In this document: positions 5,506-57,023 of the stretch, in pieces
Layout of the letters: each line of letters begins with the position of its first letter
How positions within the stretch are numbered: position 1 is the stretch's first letter
Virus record (IMG/VR): IMGVR_UViG_3300005613_000001
Coordinates: 62,001 to 126,000 of that record
Length of the DNA: 64,000 nt
Strand: one strand, 5' to 3'
Made by a program: the position numbers and the translations under genes
The notes under the pieces: generated by a model
The model's input: only the letters and a program-made list of their open reading frames with translations
Database searches by the model: none
What the model was told of the DNA's origin: nothing

Positions 5506-6069
5506 TTAACGACGAACATGAACACTAACTCCACCATAATGAAGCCTACCATTAGGATAGCGACCATTAGCGTGATAGCGACCACGATAGCCACCATAAC
5601 GATAGCCATAGCCACCACCCCAGAACATCCGATTTGCCATCGCTTGTGCCATCACGGTTCCACGACGCATTACTTCAGCTTCTAACTTCTTTTGTGCAAT
5701 TTTCGCATCATACTCCCGTTTTAAATGGTCACGATATGCCGTCAAACGATCCCTATTGAGAACCGCCTGATTGTAAAGCATTTGCTGTTGGTATTGTGCC
5801 AACTGCTGTTGGGAAGCTTGAGCCTGGGCCAACTGCTGTTGATATATCCTATGGATAACTCTAATCTGGCTGGGTGATTGACTCTCAAAGTGTTTTCTCG
5901 CTTGCTCCATCTTCTGTGGTCCGTGAGCAACATAGATGAAAGCAAGCATTTCCTCCATCATGTCCTGCTCAGTACCCGCAAAGGCTGGACCAGGAGCGGG
6001 GGCTGGGGGCTGTCCGAATGTTACATCTGAACCTAGTACAACCCAACAAACTAAAATCAAACTCTTCAT
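5506..6069 (-). CDS. secreted Q-rich protein with G/Y/R-rich tail
   Basis: signal peptide-like N-terminus, coiled coil, GGYGYRYGGY tail. Confidence 0.7.
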   Translation of the reverse strand: MKSLILVCWVVLGSDVTFGQPPAPAPGPAFAGTEQDMMEEMLAFIYVAHGPQKMEQARKHFESQSPSQIRVIHRIYQQQLAQAQASQQQLAQYQQQMLYNQAVLNRDRLTAYRDHLKREYDAKIAQKKLEAEVMRRGTVMAQAMANRMFWGGGYGYRYGGYRGRYHANGRYPNGRLHYGGVSVHVRR

Positions 6070-30866: not shown

Positions 30867-31611
30867 TATAACCATATCTGTCCATCATGGTGAGAAATTT
30901 GTTCTTGATTTCCCCATCAGGAATATCATCTGATGTGAGATCCTTTTCCCTATTACGCATAGTATTAATTTGCTTGTTCTTAAAGACTACACGCTGAACA
31001 GGAACCTTCAAAAATTCAAAAAACCCATCAGGAAATTCATCTTCCGCCCGATGAAAATAATAGGGGCGACTCTTACCAAGCTTCTCAATACGCCCGTTCC
31101 ATTCCAATAAATAAGAACAGGCCCGTTCAATGGGATTCTCTACACTACTCAATGATTTACAATGATGCCACATCCACTGCTCCCAACCCCTTTTATTAAA
31201 TGGGTTTTCTTTCAATCCTTGAAAATATTGTAAATCTTTAATAAAAGAACTAATCACGGAAAGGGGATTTCTTACGACATGAATAACAGGTACGTCTTGT
31301 AGATTAAATTTATTTAAATAAGGCAGTGCCATATAGCTTGAATCAGCCACTATATCATTCAAATGAACCCAACCGTGATTCCCAGCGCATTTGCTCATTG
31401 TGGGTTTTCGTTCACCAAATACTCGCTTCTCAATCACACCAGGCTTTGCTTGATTGAAAATGCTCTCATGCCCACAAGGGACTCCCAATGATGTGAGCAC
31501 CCTTGCCATATAGACAGTACCACATCTTCCCGTTCCTGTAACAATATACTTTAAAAATGTCATATCATTATAAATTAGTTTTACTTCTTTAAATGTATGC
31601 GAAGTTATCAT
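30847..31611 (-). CDS. sulfotransferase-like P-loop protein (start probably about 31563)
   Basis: IVTGTGRCGT, CGHE, IHVVRNPLSVISS. Confidence 0.72.
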   Translation of the reverse strand: MITSHTFKEVKLIYNDMTFLKYIVTGTGRCGTVYMARVLTSLGVPCGHESIFNQAKPGVIEKRVFGERKPTMSKCAGNHGWVHLNDIVADSSYMALPYLNKFNLQDVPVIHVVRNPLSVISSFIKDLQYFQGLKENPFNKRGWEQWMWHHCKSLSSVENPIERACSYLLEWNGRIEKLGKSRPYYFHRAEDEFPDGFFEFLKVPVQRVVFKNKQINTMRNREKDLTSDDIPDGEIKNKFLTMMDRYGYTKQVFL

Positions 31612-32694
31612 TATCTAATCGTCGGAAGTGGGCTTTTTGGCGCTACGTTTGCTAGAGAATTAAAAAAAGCCGGGAAAAAAGTCCTGGTTATTGAAAAAGA
31701 CGATCATGTTGGTGGTCATGTCTACACAAAAAAAATACACGGGGCGGAAATTCACCTGTATGGCCCTCATATCTTTCATACTGATAGTAAAAAAATATGG
31801 GACTACGTGAATAACGTAGTAGAATTTGAACCCTACTTCCATAAAGTGAAAGCTAAATACGGCAACAAGATATACTCCCTGCCGTTCAATATGTCAACAT
31901 TCTACGAATTGTGGGGATGCACAACACCTGGGGAAGCTTACCAAGAGATTGAGAAACAAAAGGTCAAAATAGAAAACCCACAAAATTTAGAAGATTGGGT
32001 ATTATCTCAAATCGGCCCAGACTTGTATCAAACCCTCATTTATGGTTATAATAAGAAACAATGGAGTAAAGAACCTCGTAAGCTGCCCGCCTCTTTAATT
32101 AAAAGGCTACCCCTAAGATTCAATTACAACGACAATTACCACCACAGTCGCTATTCGGGGTTGCCTGTTGGGGGTTATACAAACTTTGTAAATGAATTAT
32201 TAAAAGATGTAGATGTTCAATTAAATACAGACTTCTTTGAGATTAAGAAATGGCAGAAGATTGCCAAAAAATTAATTTATTCAGGCCCTATTGACCAATT
32301 GTTTGATTACAAATATGGGACATTAGAATATCGGAGCTTAGAATTTAAACATGTAGTATTAGACTACAGTTTTCAAGGCATCCCCCAGATGAATCACACA
32401 GAAGCAGATGTGCCATTTACGAGGACGGTTGAACACAAATACTTCCGCAGAGAAACAGCCGACAACCCCAGATCGGTTGTAACTTATGAATACCCAATCA
32501 ATTGGGAGCCAGGGAAGAAGAGATACTACCCAATCAACGACGATAGGAACAATGAGATAAATCGGAAATACCAAGAGGAATTGGGAAAACAACCCAAAGT
32601 CATAGCCGGGGGACGGCTCGGCACTTACCGCTACCTAGATATGCACATGGTTATTGGACAAGCACTCAAAATGGCAGAAAAGGAGTTGTCGTGA
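31597..32694 (+). CDS. glf: UDP-galactopyranose mutase
   Basis: IVGSGLFGA, YGPHIFHT, LEYRSL, YYPIND, GRLGTYRYLDM. Confidence 0.96.
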   Translation: MRSYHYLIVGSGLFGATFARELKKAGKKVLVIEKDDHVGGHVYTKKIHGAEIHLYGPHIFHTDSKKIWDYVNNVVEFEPYFHKVKAKYGNKIYSLPFNMSTFYELWGCTTPGEAYQEIEKQKVKIENPQNLEDWVLSQIGPDLYQTLIYGYNKKQWSKEPRKLPASLIKRLPLRFNYNDNYHHSRYSGLPVGGYTNFVNELLKDVDVQLNTDFFEIKKWQKIAKKLIYSGPIDQLFDYKYGTLEYRSLEFKHVVLDYSFQGIPQMNHTEADVPFTRTVEHKYFRRETADNPRSVVTYEYPINWEPGKKRYYPINDDRNNEINRKYQEELGKQPKVIAGGRLGTYRYLDMHMVIGQALKMAEKELS

Positions 32695-33827: not shown

Positions 33828-35462
33828 TCATTTCTGCTTAGTGAGGGGCACCGTTGGAGTGACATTCTTCAAATCAGTCCAAAGGGTTCCTTCACCGGCA
33901 TACAGAAAGTTCAACTTAATATCTTCAGGCAAACCTTCAGCAAACTGCCAATTGGTGTAAGCAATTGAATCACCGAACGCCTGAACAGCTAACGCAAACT
34001 TCTGCGATTTAGCTTCCTGTTGAAGTTTTTCAGCCGTTGCTTCGGCTTCTCCAACCACAACAGTTCGTTGGGCATCTAGCTCGGCAACCTGTTTATCAAT
34101 CGCTGCTACCAATTTTTCGGTTTCAGCTTCAATTTCGCCAGCCTGCTTTTCACCTTCAGCAACAGCCTCGGCGGCGAGTTTCTTGGTTTCCTCTGAAATC
34201 CTAGCCGCACCCAAAACAACCATTTGTTCAGCTTCACGAAGATTAGCTTCAACTTTGGCTGTATCCTTCTCTTGACTTCGGGTTAGCTTCAATTCATCGG
34301 CAATGTATCCCTCTTGAATAGGAATCCGCACTTCTTGAGGAATATAAATGTGCCGTACCAAGCCATAAAGTAAGGTTACATTCTTCCCACCTTCCATTAG
34401 GGTTGTGCCGTCCTCTTGTGGAACTTCACCACCCTCCAAGACACTCTTAAACTGGGAAGATGTATCCGTTTGAAATTGCTGGCGACTCTCACCAACAAGC
34501 AGATCAACAGCACCCAACTTGCTACCATTGTTACGACAAATGGATTCAGATTGAGGGATAATAACCTTTTGCTCTACCGCCTCAACATTTCCAAAAGTTC
34601 TAACAATTTGTGGGGCTTGCTCGGGCATGATTCCCCAAATGGCGGTGAAATCCAAATGAATTTTAAAGCCATCATTTGAAGGGAATGAAATACCAGTATC
34701 TTCCACCGGCAGATGCTCACCACTTTCATCCACAAAATACACGGGACGTTCAGGAGTTGAGCCTTCTCCCAGTTTCTTATCTACGGTAATGCTGGTTTCG
34801 CAATATCCAATTTCAACAATATCAACCTGCGCTTCTCGGGGATTCACAGGATACAACCCAGGTGGCAGAACCTTCTCTTGAATGCCCGCTACAAGCTTGG
34901 CTGTCTTGTCGTCAGTCAGATAAGTAACAACACCAACATAACCAGCAGGAATCTCTACCCATCCAGAGTGTTTTACCTGCAATCCTACCTTCTCGGTTTG
35001 AGTTTGCACAGTTTTAAACTCATACGCATAAGGGTGCGCCCGATAACGACCAGGACCGAAACACTTCCGAAGGATACCCTTGTATTTAGTATCTCCCAAA
35101 TCACCATCTACAAGGAATTGTCCCTTGTCCAAGTTGTCGCCCAATTTACTTGTGCAAATGCCAACTTGACCGGGTTGAATAACAACATCCGGCACAATGG
35201 TTCGCTCATACCAAATGGGGCAGTAAAAATGCCGACCAGGGCCTCTAAGATTTGCCAAAACTCCAATTTCCCCCTCTTGGGCGAAATGTCCCACTTTGGC
35301 ATAATTCTTACTACCAAAAATAAGCGGACCTTTGTACCTCAGCATGAGGTTGTAGCCCTCGGGCACATAAACCCGATTGACCGTCCAATTGAAAGCCTCA
35401 TAGCCTAAGTAAAGTCCCAAACACGCGACAATAGCAACAACTGTAATTCTAATAGACTTCAT
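33828..35462 (-). CDS. SPFH/band 7 domain membrane protein
   Basis: N-terminal TM, repeated GI...VL.PG.Y..NP units, FPSNDGF, Ala/Glu coiled coil. Confidence 0.85.
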   Translation of the reverse strand: MKSIRITVVAIVACLGLYLGYEAFNWTVNRVYVPEGYNLMLRYKGPLIFGSKNYAKVGHFAQEGEIGVLANLRGPGRHFYCPIWYERTIVPDVVIQPGQVGICTSKLGDNLDKGQFLVDGDLGDTKYKGILRKCFGPGRYRAHPYAYEFKTVQTQTEKVGLQVKHSGWVEIPAGYVGVVTYLTDDKTAKLVAGIQEKVLPPGLYPVNPREAQVDIVEIGYCETSITVDKKLGEGSTPERPVYFVDESGEHLPVEDTGISFPSNDGFKIHLDFTAIWGIMPEQAPQIVRTFGNVEAVEQKVIIPQSESICRNNGSKLGAVDLLVGESRQQFQTDTSSQFKSVLEGGEVPQEDGTTLMEGGKNVTLLYGLVRHIYIPQEVRIPIQEGYIADELKLTRSQEKDTAKVEANLREAEQMVVLGAARISEETKKLAAEAVAEGEKQAGEIEAETEKLVAAIDKQVAELDAQRTVVVGEAEATAEKLQQEAKSQKFALAVQAFGDSIAYTNWQFAEGLPEDIKLNFLYAGEGTLWTDLKNVTPTVPLTKQK

Positions 35463-35480
35463 ACTTTTCTCCTTATTCTT

Positions 35481-37061
35481 TTAGTTCTCGGGTTGAACGG
35501 CGGGAATTCCTTGAGCAGAACTCTCACTGAATTCTTTGAAAATGGATACCAGAGGACTAGACTCGCCCTTAATAGGACCGTCCGCTGTATTCACCATCAT
35601 TGCACGATAAGCGGGGGCAATCTTCTTGAACAAAGTCCAACGAGCATACTCATTGCCATCCCCACTAAAGGCTGCTACAGCAGCTTTCCAACCCGCTGCT
35701 TCCGCCTCATTGTTGAACATGATAACTTCAGCTTCGGCCTTACCTTTAGCCAAAATCGCAGAAGCTAAATCTTTTGCCGCTTCAAGTCGCTCTGTTGCCA
35801 CTTGAAGATCTTTGTTGGCAGCAATCAAAGCCAATTCCTGCTTTTTCTTGGCTTCCGTTACTTCAACAACCACTTCCTGATCGGCTTCAACTAAAGCTTT
35901 CTTCTGTAATACTAAAGCATTTTCAACAGCAAGTTCTTGTTCAGAAGTTTGCTGTTCAATTTGCTTCTCGTACTGTCCAAGCTGTTGAAAAGCAATTTGA
36001 CAATCCCGAACAGGACCAGCAATCTTTTGAGGCGGGCGAATCTTGGTAATCAAAGCTTGAATGATTTCCACGCCCTGAGAACTACATGTCGCTTGAAGGT
36101 CTTTTTGGAATTCCTCTTGGAATTGAACGCGGGTTTCGCCAGAGATGAATTCTCTACCAGAATGGTTAGAACCCTTCAAACGAGCAAATGTGCGAGCATT
36201 GGGGAGGATAATCTTCTTGATGATTTCCTCATCAATCGCATCACCATTTTCTGTGTCATTATAAATGACATAAACAGAAGATGCTTTATCTGGCATTACC
36301 CTGAATTCAATAATCCCTTCCAGAGAAACCCAGAAACCATCCTTAGTTGGGAAGCCCAAATCTCCCGCCACGGTGCCAGCCTCAGACAAATTAAACCTCT
36401 GACTGCGGCAATCCACCAAGTTAATGTCAGTCACATAAGGATTGACATAATATGTTCCGGGGTCCAACATTGTATCTTGAACACCACGGGAATTGCTGTC
36501 TACCAAAAGAACATTTGGATCTTCAGGTACAGGGGCGCTCAAGTTAGTTACGATGCCCTTGAAACCAGCGGGGACAGTTACAGGCGAGAACATTTCAATA
36601 TGTTCTGCGTAGTTGTCAATTGCTCGCTTAGGAGTACCAATAACCCAAGCATTCAAAGCATAACGTCCAGGTCGTAAGACTTCGGGGACAATACCCTTTT
36701 GGGTTTCTTCCCAGGCAATAAGAGTTCGTGGGGGTAGATCTTCCCCATAGAGCCGAACCCTCACTCCTAACTGACCCTCTGGAATTTCAATCTGAGGGTA
36801 AACTTCCCAATCCCAAACAAACGGGTTCTTGAAATACCGACCTTCTGCCAGTACGTCCTTTTGAACCCCTTTATACTCATCGGTTAAGGCAATCTCTTCA
36901 TTGGGAGGAAGATCGGTGCCTGTCTTTTTCGTCAAAACTGCCAAACTTTTGCTCGGAACTTCAATCCGGCAGTTTGTGTAGATGAAAAAGGGAGAAAAAA
37001 CCAAAATAAACACACCTAACACACACCACGCAATAATCTTTAGACCAGTCGTACTTTCCAT
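35481..37061 (-). CDS. SPFH/band 7 domain membrane protein
   Basis: paralog of neighbour; GVQ..VL..GRY..NP, FPTKDGF. Confidence 0.85.
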   Translation of the reverse strand: MESTTGLKIIAWCVLGVFILVFSPFFIYTNCRIEVPSKSLAVLTKKTGTDLPPNEEIALTDEYKGVQKDVLAEGRYFKNPFVWDWEVYPQIEIPEGQLGVRVRLYGEDLPPRTLIAWEETQKGIVPEVLRPGRYALNAWVIGTPKRAIDNYAEHIEMFSPVTVPAGFKGIVTNLSAPVPEDPNVLLVDSNSRGVQDTMLDPGTYYVNPYVTDINLVDCRSQRFNLSEAGTVAGDLGFPTKDGFWVSLEGIIEFRVMPDKASSVYVIYNDTENGDAIDEEIIKKIILPNARTFARLKGSNHSGREFISGETRVQFQEEFQKDLQATCSSQGVEIIQALITKIRPPQKIAGPVRDCQIAFQQLGQYEKQIEQQTSEQELAVENALVLQKKALVEADQEVVVEVTEAKKKQELALIAANKDLQVATERLEAAKDLASAILAKGKAEAEVIMFNNEAEAAGWKAAVAAFSGDGNEYARWTLFKKIAPAYRAMMVNTADGPIKGESSPLVSIFKEFSESSAQGIPAVQPEN

Positions 37062-37541: not shown

Positions 37542-38198
37542 ATGAAGACATGTTCAAAATGCAATTTAACTAAAGACGAAACGCTATTTTCTAAGAACTC
37601 TTCCACTAAAGACGGGTTGTACGCATGGTGTAAGGCGTGTGCGAAGGAATACCGGAAAACTGAATATAAAAAAAACAAGGCTCAACACAAAGCAAGAAAC
37701 CGCAAGTGGCGAGAAGAAAATGTTGAACATAATAAGGCTCGCAATCAAAAGTGGTTGAAAGAAAACGCCGAACACCGTAAAGTATATAAAAAGGAATATC
37801 GCAAAAAAAACCAAGAATCAATTAATGCTTATAAGCGGGAGAAATACCAACGAGACATGCAAAATCCTTACTTCAGGCTCAAGGAGTGTCTTCGTAATCG
37901 CCTCCGTAAATACATAAAACGAAAAGGAAACACCCAACGATCTAAAGACTTAACCGGATGCACCATTGAAGAACTTGTACTCCATCTTGAATCAAAATTT
38001 ATGGAAGGAATGACATGGGACAACTATGGGAAGTGGCACGTTGACCATATCATTCCTATTTCCAGCTTCAATCTCACACTAGAAACCGAAGTTGAAAAAT
38101 GTTTCCATTTTACCAATCTTCAACCTTTGTGGGCAAAAGATAATTTAAAAAAAGGCAATCTTATTCAGGATGAACTAACGAAAACTCACCCTTCATAA
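37542..38198 (+). CDS. HNH homing endonuclease
   Basis: CSKC...CKAC, GMTWDNYGKWHVDHIIP...HFTNLQPLW..DN..K; antisense to neighbours. Confidence 0.9.
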   Translation: MKTCSKCNLTKDETLFSKNSSTKDGLYAWCKACAKEYRKTEYKKNKAQHKARNRKWREENVEHNKARNQKWLKENAEHRKVYKKEYRKKNQESINAYKREKYQRDMQNPYFRLKECLRNRLRKYIKRKGNTQRSKDLTGCTIEELVLHLESKFMEGMTWDNYGKWHVDHIIPISSFNLTLETEVEKCFHFTNLQPLWAKDNLKKGNLIQDELTKTHPS

Positions 38199-38954
38199 CC
38201 CTTTTTATGTTCTTAGTCTTAACACCAAAACGATGATCTACACACCTTGATTCCATAAAATTGTAGGTGCGAATTTTATCGCCTCGGTTACCACTTCCAA
38301 CTAAAAACCTACGTAACCTGCTGTACTTCTCATCCGACTTAGACCTGTAGTGATCCTGCACTTTGGCTGTTAGGACTTTTAATGCAGTACGACGATTGGT
38401 ATGTTGATCTCTACCGTTTATGAAAACAGACAGTTTAGTAGGCAAATGTTTCATCCTAACTGCGCTGTCCGTCTTGTTTTGGTGTTGACCACCTTTACCG
38501 TGACCCCCTTGTGTGGTCACTTCTAAATCAGACTCTTTTAAAACAAGCCCATTTTGCTTGTGAATAGGCAGGATTGCTACCTTAATATAGGAAGTCTGCT
38601 TTCTGCCTTTGGATTCGGTTGGTGGGATTCTTTGGCAACAATGCTGCCCACCTTCATACTGAAAAGCCCTACCTGCGCCTTTGCCGAAAAACCTAACGGT
38701 AACATGCCCGTTAGTGCTTTCTAACAATTCGCTCTTGAGGTTAAGGGTTTTCGCATATTTAAGGTATGCAGCAAGCAATTCATCAACAAAGATTTTGGAG
38801 TCTTCACCGCCTTCGCCAAATTGAATCTCTACAACTACTTCATTGGTAGTCTTAAGAAATTCTTTGTAATCATCTAATTCTTGGCTAAAGGCACCCCCTG
38901 TTCTTCAATGCTGCATTGCTAAAGACACCCCCTATTCTTTTTTTTCTCTTTCAT
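38161..38954 (-). CDS. RF1-like class I peptide chain release factor lacking domain 1, predicted to need two +1 frameshifts (about 263 aa)
   Basis: GGQ (GKGGQHQNKTDSAVR), RF1-type PxT (QRIPPTE), EIQFGEGGED, KIRTYNF; AAGGAG-N7-ATG at 38954; segments 38954-38922, 38920-38888 and 38886-38161. Confidence 0.85.
38884..38899 (-). promoter_or_regulatory. programmed +1 frameshift cassette 2 (prfB-type, UAG)
   Basis: AGG GGG TGC CTT TAG C in the +1 frame of cassette 1; its own +1 frame is the RF ORF. Confidence 0.85.
38918..38933 (-). promoter_or_regulatory. programmed +1 frameshift cassette 1 (prfB-type, UAG)
   Basis: AGG GGG TGT CTT TAG C in frame with ATG 38954. Confidence 0.85.
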
Positions 38955-39357
38955 CTTTCATCTCCTTTAGATGGTTCATAAGTCTAGGCACCAAATCGGC
39001 TGCCATTTTCTTTATTGTATCATATTCTATGTAGGGTTGAATAGCCCCGGAATACTCCAAAACATTGACATTTACCTCTTTTGGGGGGAAGTAAGTATCC
39101 CCCAACCACGATCCCTCTTCCCTCTCATGATCTAGTTCGTGTTCCAAGAACTGTACAATTTCAAAACAATTTGCATCATCTTTAGGAACGAACCAATTAA
39201 TATAGCCCGGCAATGAATGTTCTTTGTGGGCTGTCGGCAAACCCGGTTGGTAATGGAACATCGTATAGGTTCCCCACCGGAAAATAATCTCCTGGTGGAG
39301 TGACCACAACTTCATCAAAAAACCAGATATTAAGTCGTCGCCGTTCATTTTATTCAT
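38932..39357 (-). CDS. hypothetical protein
   Basis: 141 aa ORF overlapping the RF start. Confidence 0.7.
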   Translation of the reverse strand: MNKMNGDDLISGFLMKLWSLHQEIIFRWGTYTMFHYQPGLPTAHKEHSLPGYINWFVPKDDANCFEIVQFLEHELDHEREEGSWLGDTYFPPKEVNVNVLEYSGAIQPYIEYDTIKKMAADLVPRLMNHLKEMKDEREKKE

Positions 39358-39659: not shown

Positions 39660-39809
39660 ATGAGCAAGGAAAACAAAGATAAAGATATGCTGGTGCGAGT
39701 TCAGCCCACGCTCTTTGAGAAATTCAAGGAGAAGTGCGAAGCAAACTACAAGAGCATCAGCGAAGTCATCCGAGACTTCATGCAACAATACATCAAAGAG
39801 GACAAGTGA
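39660..39809 (+). CDS. ribbon-helix-helix protein (absent from ORF track)
   Basis: MSKENKDKDMLVRVQPTLFEKFKEKCEANYKSISEVIRDFMQQYIKEDK; GTGA overlap with tnpB. Confidence 0.8.
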   Translation: MSKENKDKDMLVRVQPTLFEKFKEKCEANYKSISEVIRDFMQQYIKEDK

Positions 39810-41017
39810 AACATCTATATTCTTACAAGTTCAGTCTGAAACCAACAGCACAACAAGAAGTCTTGCTTAACAAGCACTTCGGTTGTGTAAGATGGGTCTA
39901 TAACCATTTTTTGAATGAACGCATGGAAGAATACAAAGCAAACAAGCGAAGCCTCAAACGAAGTGATAACGAGAAAGAACTGCCAACGCTCAAGCAAGAA
40001 TATACTTGGTTGAAAGAAGTAGGCAGTCAATCACTGCAATACTCGGTCGAATGTTTGCAGAACGCATACAACAATTTCTTTCGCAAGTGCAAGCAGAAAG
40101 CCAAAGGCAAGAAAGGTTTTCCTCGTTTCAAGAAGCGGCATGGTAAGCAGTCCTTCAAGGTTAAGCAGAATATCCACTTAGTTGAAGGCAAGTTGATGTT
40201 TCCTAAGTTCTTGGACGGAATTGCTATTGTTCAACATCGTGAAGTAGAAGGCGAAATCCAGTTTGCTACTATCAGTAAGAACAAGGCAGGACAATACTAT
40301 GTGAGCATTACTGTTTCCAGAGAGATGCCGCAACTTAGTCCTACTGACAAAATGGTTGGCATTGACTTGAATGTAAAAGCAAACGTGGATAGTGATGGCA
40401 ACGCCGAGCCTAATCCAAGACCTGCAAAAGAATACCGAGCAAGATTGAAACTTCTCCATCAAAGAGTGAGCCGCAAAGAAAAAGGTGGAAAGAATAGAAG
40501 TAAGGCTAAGAGACAGTTAGCCAAGTTATACTTGAAAGTAACGAACAAGCGTGAAGACCATTTGCACAAACTATCGAAACGTATGATTGACGAAAACCAA
40601 GTCATTGTATGTGAAGACCTAAGTGTGGAGTCCATGCTTGCTAAAGTAAGTCCTGATGAACGCAAAGAAACTAGACATAAAGAGAAGAAACGTCATCAGG
40701 ATATACAGGATTGTGGTTGGTCAAGTTTCCTCAACAAACTCAAGTATAAGGCTGAGTGGTATGGACGAGAGTTCATCCAAGTGAGCCGATGGTTTCCAAG
40801 TTCTCAGTTGTGTAATCATTGTAGTTGGCGTTATCACGACTTGCCAAAAGATTGCAAGGAATGGACATGCTGGAATTGTTGGGAGTATAATGACCGTGAC
40901 CACAACTCAGCGAAAAACATCCTTGAAGAAGGATTGAGAATAAGAACCTCTGGAACAGAGGGAATAGCCTATCGCCCTGATATAAGACCCGCTATGAGTG
41001 GGCTATTGGTTGGATAG
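39806..41017 (+). CDS. tnpB: RNA-guided endonuclease TnpB
   Basis: HFGCVRWVYN, RuvC GIDLN / CEDL / DRDHN, CNHC..CWNC zinc finger. Confidence 0.95.
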   Translation: MKHLYSYKFSLKPTAQQEVLLNKHFGCVRWVYNHFLNERMEEYKANKRSLKRSDNEKELPTLKQEYTWLKEVGSQSLQYSVECLQNAYNNFFRKCKQKAKGKKGFPRFKKRHGKQSFKVKQNIHLVEGKLMFPKFLDGIAIVQHREVEGEIQFATISKNKAGQYYVSITVSREMPQLSPTDKMVGIDLNVKANVDSDGNAEPNPRPAKEYRARLKLLHQRVSRKEKGGKNRSKAKRQLAKLYLKVTNKREDHLHKLSKRMIDENQVIVCEDLSVESMLAKVSPDERKETRHKEKKRHQDIQDCGWSSFLNKLKYKAEWYGREFIQVSRWFPSSQLCNHCSWRYHDLPKDCKEWTCWNCWEYNDRDHNSAKNILEEGLRIRTSGTEGIAYRPDIRPAMSGLLVG

Positions 41018-41755: not shown

Positions 41756-42157
41756 TTAATACCAATCCTTTCTGAGTTTTTTCATACGAGCCCGAGTTTT
41801 CTTTTGTGCCTCAATCAACTCAGGGACCGCCTCATTTATTTCTTTGGTAATTTGTTTATTCTGCTCTTTGAGCAATTGGTACTCTTGCCACTCCTTAACC
41901 TCTTCGTCAGACAATCTCCTCACAAAAAGTTCACTATTACGAGAATAATAATGAATTTTAATTGTTGTTTCGGGTTTAGCACTTTTTAGCCTTTTTTGAA
42001 TGGTCTCGCTCAAAGGGAGTTGAAGCATTTCCTCTAAAGTGAAAACATAATCTTTTCTACCAACAGCTTCTATATGTTCATTATAATGTGGACCCCTAAA
42101 AGCCCGAGGTCTGGGACCACCGTAAGTATGAATTTCCCAAATAAAATACTTATCCAT
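41756..42157 (-). CDS. hypothetical protein
   Basis: operonic ORF. Confidence 0.65.
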   Translation of the reverse strand: MDKYFIWEIHTYGGPRPRAFRGPHYNEHIEAVGRKDYVFTLEEMLQLPLSETIQKRLKSAKPETTIKIHYYSRNSELFVRRLSDEEVKEWQEYQLLKEQNKQITKEINEAVPELIEAQKKTRARMKKLRKDWY

Positions 42158-43280
42158 CTTTCCAAACTAACCTTTCCTTGGGAGAACCAACCGCCTCACA
42201 TAAAAATGGAGTCGGATCGGTCATTTCTAGTTCTTTCCTGCCCTGTTGCCATGATTTAGAAGCTTCCGTAGTGCCGTGCTTATACAACTCAACGTGCAAC
42301 ATGCTCCTAGAATGGCCGGGAATATCGGCGCGTTCTTTCCCCTCTCGCAAGACAGGAACAAGACAACCCACATAATCGCCACGCCTCACGGTTTGTCCCA
42401 CTTTAACATATGGATTGATTTCACCATAACAAACCACTCCGCTTCTACCTTCAACCAACACGGCATCTGTATCATTCCACCACGGCGAATCGTCTTGGGG
42501 TCCGGTGAAACCCTCCACACCGACGACCGTACCGCCTTCTACGGCATGCACAGATTGATTTTCCATTCCATAAAGATCAACACCCGTATGGTTAGAATGC
42601 TTTCTCTGAAAACCGAAAGCACCAGGATGATAATTAATTGGAATTCCACTGCAATTCTGAAGTGGGAACTTCCATCGTAAAGCATCTGCTGTCGCTTTGG
42701 CAATATCAGCAATGTTAGCTAAAGCGCCCTCTCCCTCATCCTTACAAGCCAATTCCTTCTTGATGGGTGGAACCAAATGCCAACTGCCTTTGTGCAAGCC
42801 ATTTAAGAAGTTTAAATTTCTAAAGGTGAGTGGGTTCTTCCACATGTGAGTATTCATTGCCGGGGCAACAACCACGGGGCGAGTGAAATCCCAAGCGTAA
42901 AACACACTTGTCAAAAGGTTATCACAAATACCCGCATTCATTTTCCCAAGCGTATTCGCCGTAAGTGGAGCAATTACAAAAACATCAGCCCACTTCCTCA
43001 ACTCAATATGAAGAACGGGATCATCCTTTTGCCATTCGTACCGCCACATTTCCTGTGGCTCACCTTTGTATTCGCGCGTGTATTTCCAAGCCCATTCTTC
43101 ATGCTCGGTAAAAACATCTACAACTTCTCGCAACTCAGAAAGTTTAACAAACGTTCTAAGTGCCGACTCTGTTACTACCACCTTGACTTCCCCAATCTCT
43201 TCAAGCGCGGCTACTAATTTGGGCGCAAGAGTGGTAGCAACAGAACCAGTCAAACCTAATAGGATTCTAGGCTTATCCAT
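42150..43280 (-). CDS. coaC: CoaC/HFCD flavoprotein fused to M23-like domain
   Basis: LLGLTGSVA, LHIEL..WAD..VIAPLTANTL.K, PAMNTHMW, LAC.D.G.G; C-terminal HTGVDLY...VHAVEGGTV...LHVEL. Confidence 0.85.
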   Translation of the reverse strand: MDKPRILLGLTGSVATTLAPKLVAALEEIGEVKVVVTESALRTFVKLSELREVVDVFTEHEEWAWKYTREYKGEPQEMWRYEWQKDDPVLHIELRKWADVFVIAPLTANTLGKMNAGICDNLLTSVFYAWDFTRPVVVAPAMNTHMWKNPLTFRNLNFLNGLHKGSWHLVPPIKKELACKDEGEGALANIADIAKATADALRWKFPLQNCSGIPINYHPGAFGFQRKHSNHTGVDLYGMENQSVHAVEGGTVVGVEGFTGPQDDSPWWNDTDAVLVEGRSGVVCYGEINPYVKVGQTVRRGDYVGCLVPVLREGKERADIPGHSRSMLHVELYKHGTTEASKSWQQGRKELEMTDPTPFLCEAVGSPKERLVWKDG

Positions 43281-44233: not shown

Positions 44234-44980
44234 TTACTCCAATTTTAATACTTTTTCTGCAACCACACGGGCAAGATGCTCGGGGTCTTGGGTGTCGGTA
44301 TGGTATTCCTCCACTCGGAAATTCTCAGGGTCCGGTTGCGACACAATTAAAAGCTTGTGTTCGCCCGCCTTAATGTCACGTAAATCATTTGCCACAACGA
44401 ATGAACATCCATTTTCCACGATGCTCTTCTTCGCCGCCTCAATTAATTGTGCTTTTGTGCTATCCACCAACAACTTAAACCCAACAAGATGGGTTTTTGG
44501 ACAAATTTCTTTGATGATTTTAATAAGTTTTGGGGCGGGCTCTAATTCAATGTTCCATTCTTCACTTGATCGAATTTTCCCATCCACTTGATTTGCTACA
44601 AGATAATCGCTAACTGCGGCTGCTAAAATCACTACATCAAAGCCACCTAATTGCAGCAAGTCAGAAAGGGCAACCTGATATTGTTCAAAGGTTTTGTAAG
44701 TTTGTTCAAAATAGCGATCTTGGCACCTTAAATATTCTTCGTAAAGATGAGCGCCCCGCATAAAAGCAGGGGCAAACTCTTCTTGTGCGAAATTAATTTG
44801 TGTAGAAAATGGTGTTCTAAACTCAGCCGCCCCCAAATAAGTCAATCTTGTATTAGGATCGCCACAAAGGAAAATTTGACGCGCAATCTTAGCACCAAAA
44901 GTACCACGGCTCATATTCGTGATGCTTCTCACGCGGTCAATAGGGACTTTTGTGCCACCGCTAGTCAATAAGATCTTCAT
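44234..44980 (-). CDS. coaB: phosphopantothenate-cysteine ligase CoaB
   Basis: TSGGT.VPIDRVRSITNMSRG.FG, AAAVSDY, KIRS, LVGFKL, VVANDL. Confidence 0.92.
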   Translation of the reverse strand: MKILLTSGGTKVPIDRVRSITNMSRGTFGAKIARQIFLCGDPNTRLTYLGAAEFRTPFSTQINFAQEEFAPAFMRGAHLYEEYLRCQDRYFEQTYKTFEQYQVALSDLLQLGGFDVVILAAAVSDYLVANQVDGKIRSSEEWNIELEPAPKLIKIIKEICPKTHLVGFKLLVDSTKAQLIEAAKKSIVENGCSFVVANDLRDIKAGEHKLLIVSQPDPENFRVEEYHTDTQDPEHLARVVAEKVLKLE

Positions 44981-50785: not shown

Positions 50786-52209
50786 GTGACGTACCACGGG
50801 GCAAGCCCCGTGGCTTCTCAGTTCATTGAAGACCACTGCCACATAGGGCTGTAACCTTATCTTCTCCCTGAGCGTTAATTTGGGTGCGTCCCACCCTATT
50901 ATTTCCTAAATTCTCAATTAAACTTTGTCGATCAAAAGCAAACGCTTTTATGTTATTCGCCGCAAGCACATCCCTATCATGGAGTTTTCCACACTCTTTA
51001 CAAGTCCAAGACCTGTCTTTAAGTCGCAATTCGTGATTGATTACTCCACAACTACACATCTTGCTTGACGGATCAAACCTTCCGATTTGTAGGATGTTAG
51101 TCCCATACCACTCGCCCTTGTATCGTAGCATTTCTACGAATTTTGACCAAGAGGCAGATGATATTGAACGAGCCAACTTATGGTTTTTCAACATTCCCTG
51201 CACATTCAAATCTTCAAGGCAGACCGATTGGTTCTCTCTAATCAACCTTGTAGATAATTTGTGCAGGAAATCGTTTCTTTGATTGGTAATTCGTTCATAC
51301 AATTTAGCAAGTTTAAGCCGTGCTTTTTCTCTTCGTTTGCTTCCTTTTTCTTTTCGTTTTGTCCATCGGTCAAGTCGTTTCAACTCACCAGTGGATTTTT
51401 GTAAATGCTTTGGGTTATCAACCTTCTCGCCAGTATCCAAAGCGATGAAATGTTTTAGTCCAAGGTCAATACCCACTGCTTTATCTTGTTTGGGCTTCTT
51501 TGGTTTCTTTGGCTTATCTGGCGTTTCCACCAATACCGAAGCAAAGTATTTTCCAGTTGGTGTTCTACTGATGGTAACGGTCTTAATTTCTCCATTGAAT
51601 TTCCTGTGCAGGACTGCCTTGATATTCTTTACTTTGATAATGCTAATTGTTCCCGCCTCAAAATCAACTTTTGATTTTTGAGGGCATTGAAACGATTGCC
51701 TTCCTACTTTTTTCTTGAACTTCGGGAAGCCTTTCTTCTGTCGAAAGAACCTTGTGTAAGCATTATCAAGATTACGGAGAGCCATTTGTAGTGTTTGACT
51801 ATTGACTTCTCCTAACCATTCCAGTTCTTGTTTTAATTTCGTCAAGCGTGCGGATAATTCAATGGACGATAGTGATTTTTGTGTTTCCTGATACTCTTTG
51901 ATTCGTGTTTCTAATCCCCAATTATAAACGAACCTTGAACAGCCAAAATGCTTATTCAAAAGTGTCTTTTGCTCATTCGTGGGGTAGAGTCTGTATTTGA
52001 ATGCTTTAAGTATCATCACCTTTATATAGTGACGACACTTTCATTTCTTACGGAAAAATTCTATTTTCCGTAAAATAATTTATCCACACTATGGCGGCTT
52101 ACATCCACGACCCAAGGGCTGGCACTTTTGTTCGTCTCGCTACGCTCAACTCGCTCTCAGTGCCAGCATTTTTGCTCCGCAAAAATGTCATGGTTTTACG
52201 CCGCCGATT
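50786..52209 (-). mobile_element. IS200/IS605-family TnpB-only element
   Basis: TTAT target, AAAA + CCATGAC left-end hairpin; right end GAAG-CCACGGGGC-TT-GCCCCGTGG...TCAC; excision restores the flanking stop. Confidence 0.88.
50823..52019 (-). CDS. tnpB: RNA-guided endonuclease TnpB
   Basis: KAFKYRLYPT, RuvC GIDLG / LEDL / DRDV, CSC..CKEC. Confidence 0.96.
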   Translation of the reverse strand: MMILKAFKYRLYPTNEQKTLLNKHFGCSRFVYNWGLETRIKEYQETQKSLSSIELSARLTKLKQELEWLGEVNSQTLQMALRNLDNAYTRFFRQKKGFPKFKKKVGRQSFQCPQKSKVDFEAGTISIIKVKNIKAVLHRKFNGEIKTVTISRTPTGKYFASVLVETPDKPKKPKKPKQDKAVGIDLGLKHFIALDTGEKVDNPKHLQKSTGELKRLDRWTKRKEKGSKRREKARLKLAKLYERITNQRNDFLHKLSTRLIRENQSVCLEDLNVQGMLKNHKLARSISSASWSKFVEMLRYKGEWYGTNILQIGRFDPSSKMCSCGVINHELRLKDRSWTCKECGKLHDRDVLAANNIKAFAFDRQSLIENLGNNRVGRTQINAQGEDKVTALCGSGLQ

Positions 52210-56940: not shown

Positions 56941-57023
56941 TGGAGGCGAGGGGATTCGAACCCCTATCTCACAAGATCTCCCGAAGGTTTTAACGTGTGG
57001 CTCTCCCGTTGAGCTACGCCCCC
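56941..57023 (-). ncRNA. tRNA-like RNA with Ala-type G3:U70 acceptor and expanded anticodon loop
   Basis: GGGGGCG/CGCCTCC-A acceptor, GCTC/GAGC D-stem, AGGGG-TTCGAAT-CCCCT T-arm, 18-nt anticodon loop. Confidence 0.75.

What the first reader, a model, noticed from the sequence alone, without database searches (positions are those of the whole stretch)
38161..38967. Phage RF1-like gene gated by two tandem prfB-type +1 frameshifts at CUU-UAG: a predicted amber-termination sensor
Seen: RF homology (EIQFGEGGEDSKIFVDELL) extends upstream of the track's TTG, and that frame has no ATG/GTG/TTG back to a TGA at 38905-38907. An AAGGAG SD sits 7 nt before ATG 38954, giving MKEKKKN then AGG GGG TGT CTT TAG C. 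The +1 frame reads SNAALKN then AGG GGG TGC CTT TAG C. A second +1 shift enters the RF frame exactly (SQELDDY...GGQ). Established: the E. coli prfB autoregulatory site is AGG GGG UAU CUU UGA C (internal SD, CUU-U slip, stop read by RF2), and PxT-type RF1 reads UAG. Inference: the cassette was rewired to UAG to match an RF1-type factor and then duplicated. Output would scale roughly as p squared, so the phage RF is made only when UAG termination fails and then shuts itself off. I know of no described UAG version or double cassette, but could not search.
Basis: partly seen in the sequence, partly recalled or inferred. Interest (0 to 1): 0.96.

Follow-up and report, generated by a model that had tools for sequence, protein, structure and literature searches.

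The report
Phage release factor behind two frameshifts
A giant phage carries a shortened copy of the bacterial protein that ends translation at UAG/UAA, and this gene can only be read in full if the ribosome slips forward one base at two consecutive UAG stop signals; dozens of related phages share the arrangement, which probably lets the phage make the factor only when the cell is terminating poorly.

Summary
On the minus strand a good SD and ATG 38954 open an 11-codon leader that ends AGGGGG-TGT-CTT-TAG-C. The +1 frame gives 11 more codons ending AGGGGG-TGC-CTT-TAG-C. A second +1 shift enters a 241-codon RF1-type body (PPT and GGQ motifs, no domain 1) that has no start codon of its own. This is not chance or artefact. 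A 94%-identical relative from another sample keeps both cassettes and their register although the spacer has diverged and lost 3 nt. Most of about 55 diverged relatives carry one or two CTT-T-stop cassettes in the required register (35 strict matches, none in the wrong register). One of them is a published 595-kb huge phage. Relatives with the same RF1-type reading head use TGA, TAG and TAA in nearly every combination, and about half use TGA only. So "UAG chosen to match RF1" is not a family rule. The general model is a sensor of termination capacity, which becomes self-feedback where the stop is UAG or UAA, as here. CUU-UAG-C frameshifting and a doubly recoded viral RF gene are already known from Mimivirus. 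I found no report of tandem +1 cassettes or of frameshifting in an RF1-type gene.

The parts
38962..38967 (-). Shine-Dalgarno AAGGAG for the leader, 7 nt before the ATG
   Evidence: Read directly.
38919..38954 (-). Leader ORF (frame 0): 11 sense codons (MKEKKKNRGCL), then TAG
   Evidence: Lys/Arg-rich short leaders recur in relatives.
38918..38933 (-). Cassette 1: AGGGGG-TGT-CTT-TAG-C (internal SD, 3-nt spacer, slippery CTT-T, stop, +4 C)
   Evidence: The same layout is present in 18 of 18 first-of-double cassettes of relatives.
38885..38920 (-). Intermediate ORF (+1 frame): 11 sense codons (SNAALKNRGCL), then TAG
   Evidence: It has no start codon with a usable SD.
38884..38899 (-). Cassette 2: AGGGGG-TGC-CTT-TAG-C, 34 nt after cassette 1
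   Evidence: It is conserved in L151 with a 31-nt spacing.
38161..38886 (-). RF1-type body (frame +2): 241 codons plus TAA, covering domains 2-4 only
   Evidence: Pfam PCRF and RF-1. NCBIfam prfA 224 bits, aligned to model positions 103-332. AF2 pLDDT 94; TM 0.90 and rmsd 1.4 A to ribosome-bound RF1.
38617..38625 (-). Tripeptide 'anticodon' P-P-T inside QRIPPTESKGRKQTS (RF1-type stop reader)
38485..38493 (-). Catalytic GGQ motif
   Evidence: Invariant in 78 family members.
38932..39357 (-). Upstream 141-aa ORF of unknown function. It is in the RF frame, and its TAG (38934-38932) overlaps the SD of cassette 1. That TAG and the TGA at 38907-38905 keep its ribosomes out of the RF body.
   Evidence: no Pfam family. 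It is not conserved upstream of the 94%-identical RF in L151.

Best explanation
This is a gene of a huge phage (527-kb contig) for a short RF1-type class-I release factor. The protein has domains 2-4, the PPT and GGQ motifs, and no domain 1. Its body has no initiation codon.

Proposed path of the ribosome:
1. Ribosomes start at ATG 38954 on an 11-codon leader.
2. At cassette 1, with CUU in the P site, UAG-C in the A site, and the internal SD AGGGGG 3 nt upstream pairing with 16S rRNA, either a release factor terminates or peptidyl-tRNA-Leu slips from CUU to UUU (+1).
3. Eleven codons later the same choice is made at an almost identical cassette 2.
4. Only ribosomes that shift twice make the roughly 263-aa factor.

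Both stops are UAG, which RF1-type factors read. Output should therefore fall steeply, roughly as the product of two shift probabilities, as UAG-termination activity rises. That activity comes from host RF1 plus the phage factor itself. The result would be a termination-capacity sensor with negative feedback.

Shown here: the anatomy, the RF1-type fold and motifs, the lack of any other start, and strong conservation of cassettes and register across the family.

Inferred: that shifting actually occurs, its efficiency, its dependence on RF1, and the feedback.
For: Anatomy and chance.

No alternative start.

RF1 type:
- prfA 224 bits against prfB 146.
- RF1 structures 152 bits against RF2 95, with the QR-P-x-T-ES-GR-x-x-TS block aligned.
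- AF2 pLDDT 94, and TM 0.90 to RF1 on the 70S ribosome.

Close relative L151 (94% aa identity, different sample and different upstream gene): both CTT-TAG-C cassettes are kept. The SD is AGGAGG in both. The spacer has diverged and is 3 nt shorter, so the register is kept.

Family evidence:
- One or two CTT-T-stop cassettes sit between a short ATG leader and the RF frame in most of about 55 non-redundant relatives.
- A frame-blind scan for GGRGG-N3-CTT-T-stop found 35 hits in the leaders: 17 enter the RF frame, 18 need exactly one more +1, and 0 are in the inconsistent register. The rest of these loci (338 kb) gave 3 hits.
- First-of-double cassettes have GGRGG exactly 3 nt before CTT in 18 of 18, and +4 C in 14 of 18.
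- A published 595-kb huge phage, LR756511.1, has a TAA+TGA double.

Window properties:
- C after a stop is avoided in the window's own genes (6 of 90), as expected for a weak terminator context.
- The leader RNA has no significant structure (z = +1.5), which fits an SD/slip/stop device.
- The window uses the standard code. Stops are TAA 41, TGA 30, TAG 19, and alternative codes give no gain in coding density.
Against: - There are no expression data of any kind.
- The host is unknown, so its tRNA-Leu, its anti-SD use and its RF1 level are unknown.
- Two serial shifts may give very little protein.
- In the family, 24 of 46 gated genes carry only TGA although their reading head is RF1-type. Self-feedback therefore cannot be the general reason for the gate. 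The UAG choice here may be one state of a rapidly changing character: at least 9 changes of the proximal stop and at least 14 changes of cassette number on the tree.
- Stop identity correlates neither with GC content (p = 0.37) nor with the tripeptide.
- Three close relatives have lost the gate altogether (L071, L084, L096).
Confidence: 0.72

Rival explanations
1. The cassettes are a fixed attenuator or delay, not a sensor. The two frameshifts occur, but at a roughly constant low rate. They only keep a potentially toxic release factor at a low dose, independent of RF1 or RF2 activity.
For: Stop identity is highly variable and not matched to the RF1-type head. Some second cassettes lack an SD (L069, L079, L099). 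Excess RF2 is toxic in B. subtilis (PMC12421855).
Against: A stop codon follows CTT in every cassette, and no case with a rare sense codon was seen. The +4 base is C in 28 of 37 double-cassette sites. Competition with a release factor is intrinsic to a stop in the A site, as established for prfB.
Confidence: 0.15
2. The first event is termination followed by re-initiation, not a frameshift. Ribosomes stop at TAG 38921-38919 and restart at TTG 38908 in the intermediate frame, so only cassette 2 needs a frameshift.
For: A TTG lies 11 nt after the first TAG in the intermediate frame. L151 has an ATG in its intermediate ORF.
Against: Relatives such as L069 have no start codon in the intermediate ORF at all, and others have one only upstream of cassette 1. 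Re-initiation would not need CTT, nor an SD exactly 3 nt before it, yet 18 of 18 first cassettes have both. The cassette-1 SD is 19 nt from the TTG.
Confidence: 0.05
3. The phage uses a different genetic code. It reads TGA as sense, and the gene starts at ATG 38916 (M-Q-H-TGA...) in the RF frame, so no frameshift is needed.
For: ATG 38916-38914 is in the RF frame with only TGA 38907-38905 between it and the body. Some relatives do come from TGA-recoded phages, with in-frame TGA at Trp-like positions.
Against: - The window ends 30 of 90 ORFs with TGA, and code 4 gives no gain in coding density.
- No suppressor tRNA lies in the window.
- The ATG is not conserved in the 94%-identical L151, whose RF frame has two TGAs upstream.
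- TGA-recoded relatives mostly have plain ATG starts and no cassettes.
- This reading leaves the two perfect in-register cassettes unexplained.
Confidence: 0.03
4. The gene is a decayed pseudogene or an assembly artefact, and the repeat is meaningless.
For: Gene callers truncate the ORF at a downstream TTG in the window and at position 534 in L151.
Against: - The body is intact: all catalytic and decoding motifs are present and pLDDT is 94.
- The same architecture is found in another sample at 94% identity.
- It recurs in dozens of lineages at 45-60% identity, with none of 35 strict cassette matches in the wrong register.
Confidence: 0.02

Closest known systems
Bacterial prfB (RF2) programmed +1 frameshift autoregulation
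   Same: The cassette grammar is identical: an SD-like GGRGG/AGGGGG 3 nt before CTT, the slippery CTT-T, a stop in the A site, C at +4, and a downstream +1 ORF encoding a class-I release factor (PMC12421855).
   Different: - In prfB there is one cassette, inside domain 1 at about codon 26. The stop is TGA in 98.6% and TAA in 1.4% of 8,164 genomes, and never TAG. No frameshifting is found in prfA.
- Here the factor is RF1-type and lacks domain 1.
- The cassettes lie in a short non-homologous leader and are often doubled.
- They use TAG, TGA or TAA without matching the factor's specificity.
Mimivirus R726 / Megavirus mg280 class-I release factor (Jeudy et al. 2012, PMC3521657)
   Same: It is a virus-encoded release factor whose synthesis needs two recoding events at two internal stops. 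One of them is a +1 shift at CUU UAG C (Mimivirus) or CUU UAA C (Megavirus). The authors interpret it as autoregulation.
   Different: - The protein is the eukaryotic/archaeal eRF1 type, not homologous to RF1.
- The first event is UGA-C readthrough, not a second frameshift.
- No SD element is involved.
- The host is an amoeba, not a bacterium.
Release factors of huge and stop-codon-recoded phages (Al-Shayeb et al. 2020, PMC7162821; Borges et al. preprint 10.1101/2021.08.26.457843)
   Same: RF1 and RF2 genes are already listed in huge phage genomes and in 'code-change modules'. LR756511.1 from that data set belongs to this family.
   Different: Those papers do not mention frameshifting. Family members from TGA-recoded phages mostly lack the gate. 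The window's phage uses the standard code.
PrfH (RF-H), the RtcB-linked rescue factor
   Same: It is also a class-I release factor without domain 1 (PMC6514570).
   Different: The window protein scores only 66 bits against a prfH cutoff of 167. It keeps a canonical RF1 stop-reading head. No RtcB gene was seen among its neighbours.

Membership tests
prfB-type +1 programmed frameshift cassette | In-frame premature stop directly after a CTT codon (CTT-T slippery run) | tested here: met
   CTT TAG occurs twice, each in the frame of the ORF that reaches it.
prfB-type +1 programmed frameshift cassette | SD-like purine run 3 nt upstream of CTT (6 nt upstream of the stop) | tested here: met
   AGGGGG lies 3 nt before CTT in both cassettes. 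In relatives, 18 of 18 first cassettes and 16 of 19 second cassettes have it.
prfB-type +1 programmed frameshift cassette | C following the stop (weak termination context) | tested here: met
   Both cassettes read TAG-C. C at +4 occurs in only 6 of 90 ORF ends in the window.
prfB-type +1 programmed frameshift cassette | The +1 frame downstream encodes the functional release factor, and there is no other start | tested here: met
   Two successive shifts are needed.
prfB-type +1 programmed frameshift cassette | Stop codon cognate to the encoded factor (autoregulation) | tested here: inconclusive
   In the window, UAG is paired with an RF1-type head, which is consistent. In the family, 24 of 46 gated genes have only TGA with an RF1-type head.
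prfB-type +1 programmed frameshift cassette | Frameshifting demonstrated and responsive to release-factor level | not testable with these tools
   This needs reporters, in vitro translation or proteomics.
Release factor 1 (prfA equivalog) | PCRF and RF-1 domains with GGQ and a P-x-T tripeptide | tested here: met
Release factor 1 (prfA equivalog) | Full length with N-terminal domain 1; score above the NCBIfam equivalog cutoff | tested here: not met
   The match covers model positions 103-332 only. It scores 224 bits against a cutoff of 400. The short phage RFs form their own clade (support 100) beside full-length RF1.
PrfH | Score above the TIGR03072 cutoff; RtcB neighbour | tested here: not met
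   It scores 66 bits against a cutoff of 166.65. The neighbours are a predicted HNH-like ORF, an unknown ORF and a TnpB.
Code-change module RF of stop-recoded phages | Phage genome with in-frame recoded stops and a suppressor tRNA | tested here: not met
   The window uses the standard code. Its five tRNAs include no suppressor. Only 64 kb of the 527-kb contig were examined.

The most novel reading that the evidence does not exclude
A large, previously unrecognised family of phage-encoded, domain-1-less RF1-type factors is controlled by modular prfB-like +1 frameshift cassettes. These are used singly or in tandem, and with any of the three stops. Tandem cassettes with different stops (UAG+UGA, UAA+UGA, UAA+UAG) would act as coincidence detectors of host RF1 and RF2 activity. 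The UAG+UAG version in this window would be an ultrasensitive amber-termination sensor with self-feedback. If so, this is the first programmed frameshift in the RF1 lineage, the first tandem +1 frameshift device in bacteria or their viruses, and a natural read-out of how phages monitor and top up host termination capacity.
Probability: 0.4. Interest if true: 0.9.

Novelty: new variant of a known kind. Interest (0 to 1): 0.8.

Why it matters
A 2025 survey of 12,753 genomes concluded that frameshift autoregulation belongs to RF2 only and that TAG never occupies the frameshift motif (PMC12421855). This phage family breaks both rules, and it does so in dozens of lineages.

It offers a natural series of one- and two-cassette devices carrying UAG, UGA or UAA. 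With these one can test directly how termination efficiency sets +1 frameshifting, and whether serial cassettes give switch-like control.

It raises the question of why standard-code huge phages bring their own domain-1-less RF1-type factor, which by analogy with truncated RFs may act without RF3, and why they release it only conditionally.

It also shows that these genes are systematically mis-annotated with truncated starts. The cassettes are compact parts of possible use as termination sensors in synthetic biology.

Tried and rejected
1. TGA-as-sense code with a start at ATG 38916. Rejected on the window's stop usage and coding density, on the absence of a suppressor tRNA in the window, and because the ATG is not conserved in L151.

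2. An 'in-frame TGA readthrough gate' as a third architecture (L004/L091, L116, L077, L109). L004 and L116 come from TGA-recoded phages, because TGA also sits inside the conserved RF body. For them it is ordinary recoding. L077 and L109 stay unresolved.

3. Stop identity explained by GC content (Mann-Whitney p = 0.37) or by the tripeptide variant (PPT occurs with every stop type). No association was found.

4. A stimulatory RNA structure around the cassettes. None was found (z = +1.5).

5. A -1 slip on the A-run (A AAA AAG) in the leader. It would land in the upstream ORF's frame and meet TAG 38934-38932 at once, as read from the sequence, so it is not a route.

6. The odd tRNA at 56941-57023 as a four-base-anticodon frameshift suppressor. 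Rfam aligns it as a tRNA with about 11 extra nucleotides in the anticodon loop. ARAGORN's 'aaac' would read GUUU, not CUUU. No link could be made.

7. Translational coupling to the upstream 141-aa ORF as part of the device. That ORF is absent upstream of the 94%-identical gene in L151.

8. Literature searches for phage RF frameshifting. Nothing was found beyond Mimivirus.

9. Whether the copies in MAGs labelled Pirellulaceae and Obscuribacterales are cellular or mis-binned phage. Flanking genes were uninformative.
Full report
**1. What is in the sequence**

All features lie on the minus strand.
- A Shine-Dalgarno AAGGAG (38967-38962) lies 7 nt before ATG 38954.
- That ATG opens an 11-codon leader (MKEKKKNRGCL) ending at TAG 38921-38919.
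- The last 16 nt of the leader read AGGGGG-TGT-CTT-TAG-C.
- Reading from AGC 38920, one base forward, gives 11 more codons (SNAALKNRGCL) ending at TAG 38887-38885 within AGGGGG-TGC-CTT-TAG-C.
- One more base forward, AGC 38886 opens a 241-codon frame that runs to TAA 38163-38161.
- The two cassettes are 34 nt apart, so the second is in frame only for a ribosome that shifted +1 at the first.

The pattern AGGGGGNNNCTTTAG occurs only at these two places in the window and in none of 100 shuffles.

The RF frame has no ATG, GTG or TTG between the TGA at 38907-38905 and the family-invariant G-x-G-G-x-D-S block. The TTG that gene callers choose (38778) removes that block.

**2. What the protein is**

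- The body has the PCRF and RF-1 domains.
- It scores 224 bits against NCBIfam prfA, 146 against prfB and 66 against prfH. The match covers RF1 positions 103-332 only, so the N-terminal domain 1 is missing and the equivalog cutoff of 400 bits is not reached.
- Solved RF1 structures are the best sequence matches, at 152 bits against 95 for RF2. The decoding block QR-P-x-T-ES-GR-x-x-TS is aligned.
- The tripeptide is PPT (38625-38617) and the catalytic GGQ is at 38493-38485.
- An AlphaFold2 model built on 78 family members has pLDDT 94. It superposes on ribosome-bound T. thermophilus RF1 domains 2-4 with TM 0.90 and rmsd 1.4 A.

The protein is thus RF1-type by sequence and fold, but it is not a prfA equivalog.

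**3. Where it comes from, and the genetic code**

The window is part of a 527-kb viral contig (IMGVR_UViG_3300005613_000001).

The window uses the standard code. Its ORFs end with TAA 41, TGA 30 and TAG 19, and coding density does not rise under TGA-sense or TAG-sense codes. None of the five tRNAs is a suppressor.

**4. Comparative evidence that the frameshifts are programmed**

*A close relative.* L151 comes from another sample and has a different upstream gene. Its RF is 94% identical. It keeps two CTT-TAG-C cassettes, and both SDs are AGGAGG instead of AGGGGG. The spacer has many substitutions and is 3 nt shorter (31 nt against 34), so the +1 register is preserved.

*Viral contigs.* Relatives at 53-62% identity show two cassettes with TGA+TGA (L002), two with TAA+TGA (L003), or one with TGA (L005, L006).

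*Metagenome scan.* One scan returned 80 more loci. After removing near-duplicates, 65 RFs were classified:

| Architecture | Count |
|---|---|
| Single TGA | 20 |
| Single TAG | 4-5 |
| Double TAG+TAG | 5 |
| Double TAG+TGA | 5 |
| Double TGA+TGA | 4 |
| Double TAA+TAG | 4 |
| Double TAA+TGA | 2 |
| Double GTT-TAG + CTT-TAG | 1 |
| In-frame TGA | 3 |
| Plain start | 3 |
| Plain start, TGA-recoded phage | 9 |
| Full-length RF1 outgroup | 2 |
| Classical RF2 outgroup | 2 |

*Frame-blind scan.* GGRGG-N3-CTT-T-stop was searched in the 200 nt before the conserved block of 55 loci. It gave 35 hits. Seventeen lead directly into the RF frame. Eighteen need exactly one more +1 shift, and each of these has a further CTT-stop site downstream. 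None lies in the third register. The remaining 338 kb of the same loci gave 3 hits.

*Cassette profile.* First-of-double cassettes have GGRGG exactly 3 nt before CTT in 18 of 18, a T after the SD in 15 of 18, and C after the stop in 14 of 18. This is the prfB grammar.

*A published genome.* The 595-kb huge phage LR756511.1 carries a TAA+TGA double.

*Family size and annotation.* The protein database holds more than 1,200 relatives at E <= 1e-20. The best 120 are all 172-300 aa long and are annotated at most as 'peptide chain release factor 1'. The truncated starts are therefore systematic.

**5. Evolutionary pattern**

The short phage RFs form a clade (support 100) next to full-length RF1. Architectures are interspersed on the tree. 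The minimum counts are 14 changes of cassette number, 9 changes of the proximal stop, and 13 changes of 'an RF1-readable stop is present'.

The window's nearest relatives are single-TGA genes (L067, L070) and a TAG+TGA double (L068).

In doubles, the distal cassette nearly always carries TAG or TAA (16 of 18). The proximal one carries TAG (11) or TGA (8). Singles are mostly TGA (21 of 28).

Stop type is associated neither with GC content (p = 0.37) nor with the tripeptide.

Within a genome the two cassettes tend to resemble each other. They are identical over 22 nt in L151 and differ at 3 positions in the window.

**6. Mechanism**

The part that follows from established prfB biology is this. 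With CUU in the P site and a poorly terminated stop (C at +4) in the A site, an SD-anti-SD duplex 3 nt upstream promotes slippage of tRNA-Leu onto UUU. A release factor that reads the stop competes with the slip.

Applied here, each cassette is a decision point between termination at UAG and a +1 shift, and the RF body is reached only after two shifts. Three observations from the window are consistent with this:
- stop-plus-C is avoided at genuine gene ends (6 of 90);
- the leader RNA is unstructured;
- two stops in the RF frame (TAG 38934-38932 and TGA 38907-38905) keep ribosomes of the upstream 141-aa ORF out of the body.

The inferred part is that output falls roughly as the product of the two shift probabilities, and that it responds to host RF1 and to the phage factor itself.

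For the family as a whole, self-feedback cannot be the common principle, because half of the gated genes use only UGA. The model that fits all members is a sensor of termination capacity at whichever stop is installed. Self-feedback is added where that stop is UAG or UAA.

One possible rationale for UGA gates is my inference only. Extra RF1 could take over UAA termination and so free RF2 for UGA.

**7. Rival readings**

Five were considered: a fixed attenuator, termination followed by re-initiation at the first site, a TGA-sense code with a start at ATG 38916, a pseudogene, and an assembly artefact. The evidence for and against each is listed in the rivals section. Only the fixed attenuator retains appreciable weight.

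**8. Comparison with what is known**

- Bacterial prfB has the same cassette grammar. In 8,164 motif-bearing genomes its stop is TGA (98.6%) or TAA (1.4%) and never TAG. The same study found no programmed frameshifting in prfA (PMC12421855).
- All CUU-stop +1 sites in RECODE are prfB (PMC10885494).
- The closest functional analogue is the Mimivirus/Megavirus eRF1-type gene. It needs UGA-C readthrough plus a +1 shift at CUU UAG C or CUU UAA C, shown experimentally (PMC3521657). A UAG version and a doubly recoded viral RF gene are therefore already described, but in a non-homologous factor of eukaryotic viruses and without tandem frameshifts.
- Papers on huge phages and recoded phages list RF1 and RF2 genes without mentioning frameshifting.
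- Seven full-text searches found no report of frameshifting in phage RF genes or in RF1-type genes. The library does not cover subscription-only papers, so an earlier report cannot be excluded.

**9. Verdict**

- The feature is real, conserved and almost certainly functional.
- The idea of an amber-termination sensor is plausible for this phage but is not the family rule.
- The claim of complete novelty must be tempered by the Mimivirus case.

I class it as a new variant of a known kind and of high interest to the recoding and phage-translation fields.

Noticed in passing
window 56941-57023 (-): A tRNA-like gene (Rfam tRNA, 47.5 bits) has an anticodon loop about 11 nt too long (UUAAAACCUUCGGGAGAU, containing a CC-UUCG-GG hairpin). 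ARAGORN calls it tRNA-??? with a four-base anticodon 'aaac'. Its identity and function are unresolved, and no link to the CUU-U slip sites could be made.
   Followed up: partly
L006 3301-5672 (IMGVR_UViG_3300049617_000144): In this relative the RF gene is split after residue 160 by a 2.37-kb insert. The insert ends in a group II intron domain V/VI match (RF00029, 44 bits, 5595-5671) and contains a 571-aa ORF. The second exon resumes at 5673.
   Followed up: partly
L101, L108, L111-L114, L116, L004/L091, L147-L150 (LR756501-4, LR745206): Family members from apparently TGA-recoded phages have in-frame TGA at Trp-like positions inside the RF body. Most start at a plain ATG without any cassette. 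L101 combines an internal sense-like TGA with a perfect CTT-TGA-A cassette, which is hard to reconcile.
   Followed up: partly
L154-L169 (MAG contigs labelled Pirellulaceae, Planctomycetota, Obscuribacterales): The same short RF1-type gene occurs in many metagenome-assembled 'bacterial' bins. It has one SD-less CTT-TAG-C cassette (a few have TGA-C) after a 15-43-aa Lys/Arg-rich leader. Whether these are cellular genes, prophages or mis-binned phage contigs was not resolved.
   Followed up: partly
L142 (Ga0098035_1024052): A short, domain-1-less factor with an RF2-type SPF tripeptide sits behind a single CTT-TGA-C cassette. This looks like a phage-style 'mini-RF2' with a cognate stop.
   Followed up: no
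window 39734-41017 (+) and 50823-52019 (-): Two TnpB / IS605 OrfB-type ORFs (HTH_OrfB_IS605, OrfB_IS605 and Cas12f1-like TNB domains) lie inside the phage genome. The first is 400 bp upstream of the RF locus on the other strand.
   Followed up: no
window 37542-38198 (+): A 218-aa Cys- and Lys-rich ORF converges on the RF gene and overlaps its last 38 nt. It has no Pfam hit. Its C-terminal part looks HNH-like by eye only.
   Followed up: no
window 33828-37061 (-), 42150-43280 (-), 44234-44980 (-), 31597-32694 (+): The neighbourhood carries auxiliary genes: two adjacent SPFH/Band-7 proteins, a flavoprotein-M23 peptidase fusion with a separate DFP-like ORF (a split CoaBC-like pair), and a UDP-galactopyranose mutase. 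None is linked to translation.
   Followed up: no
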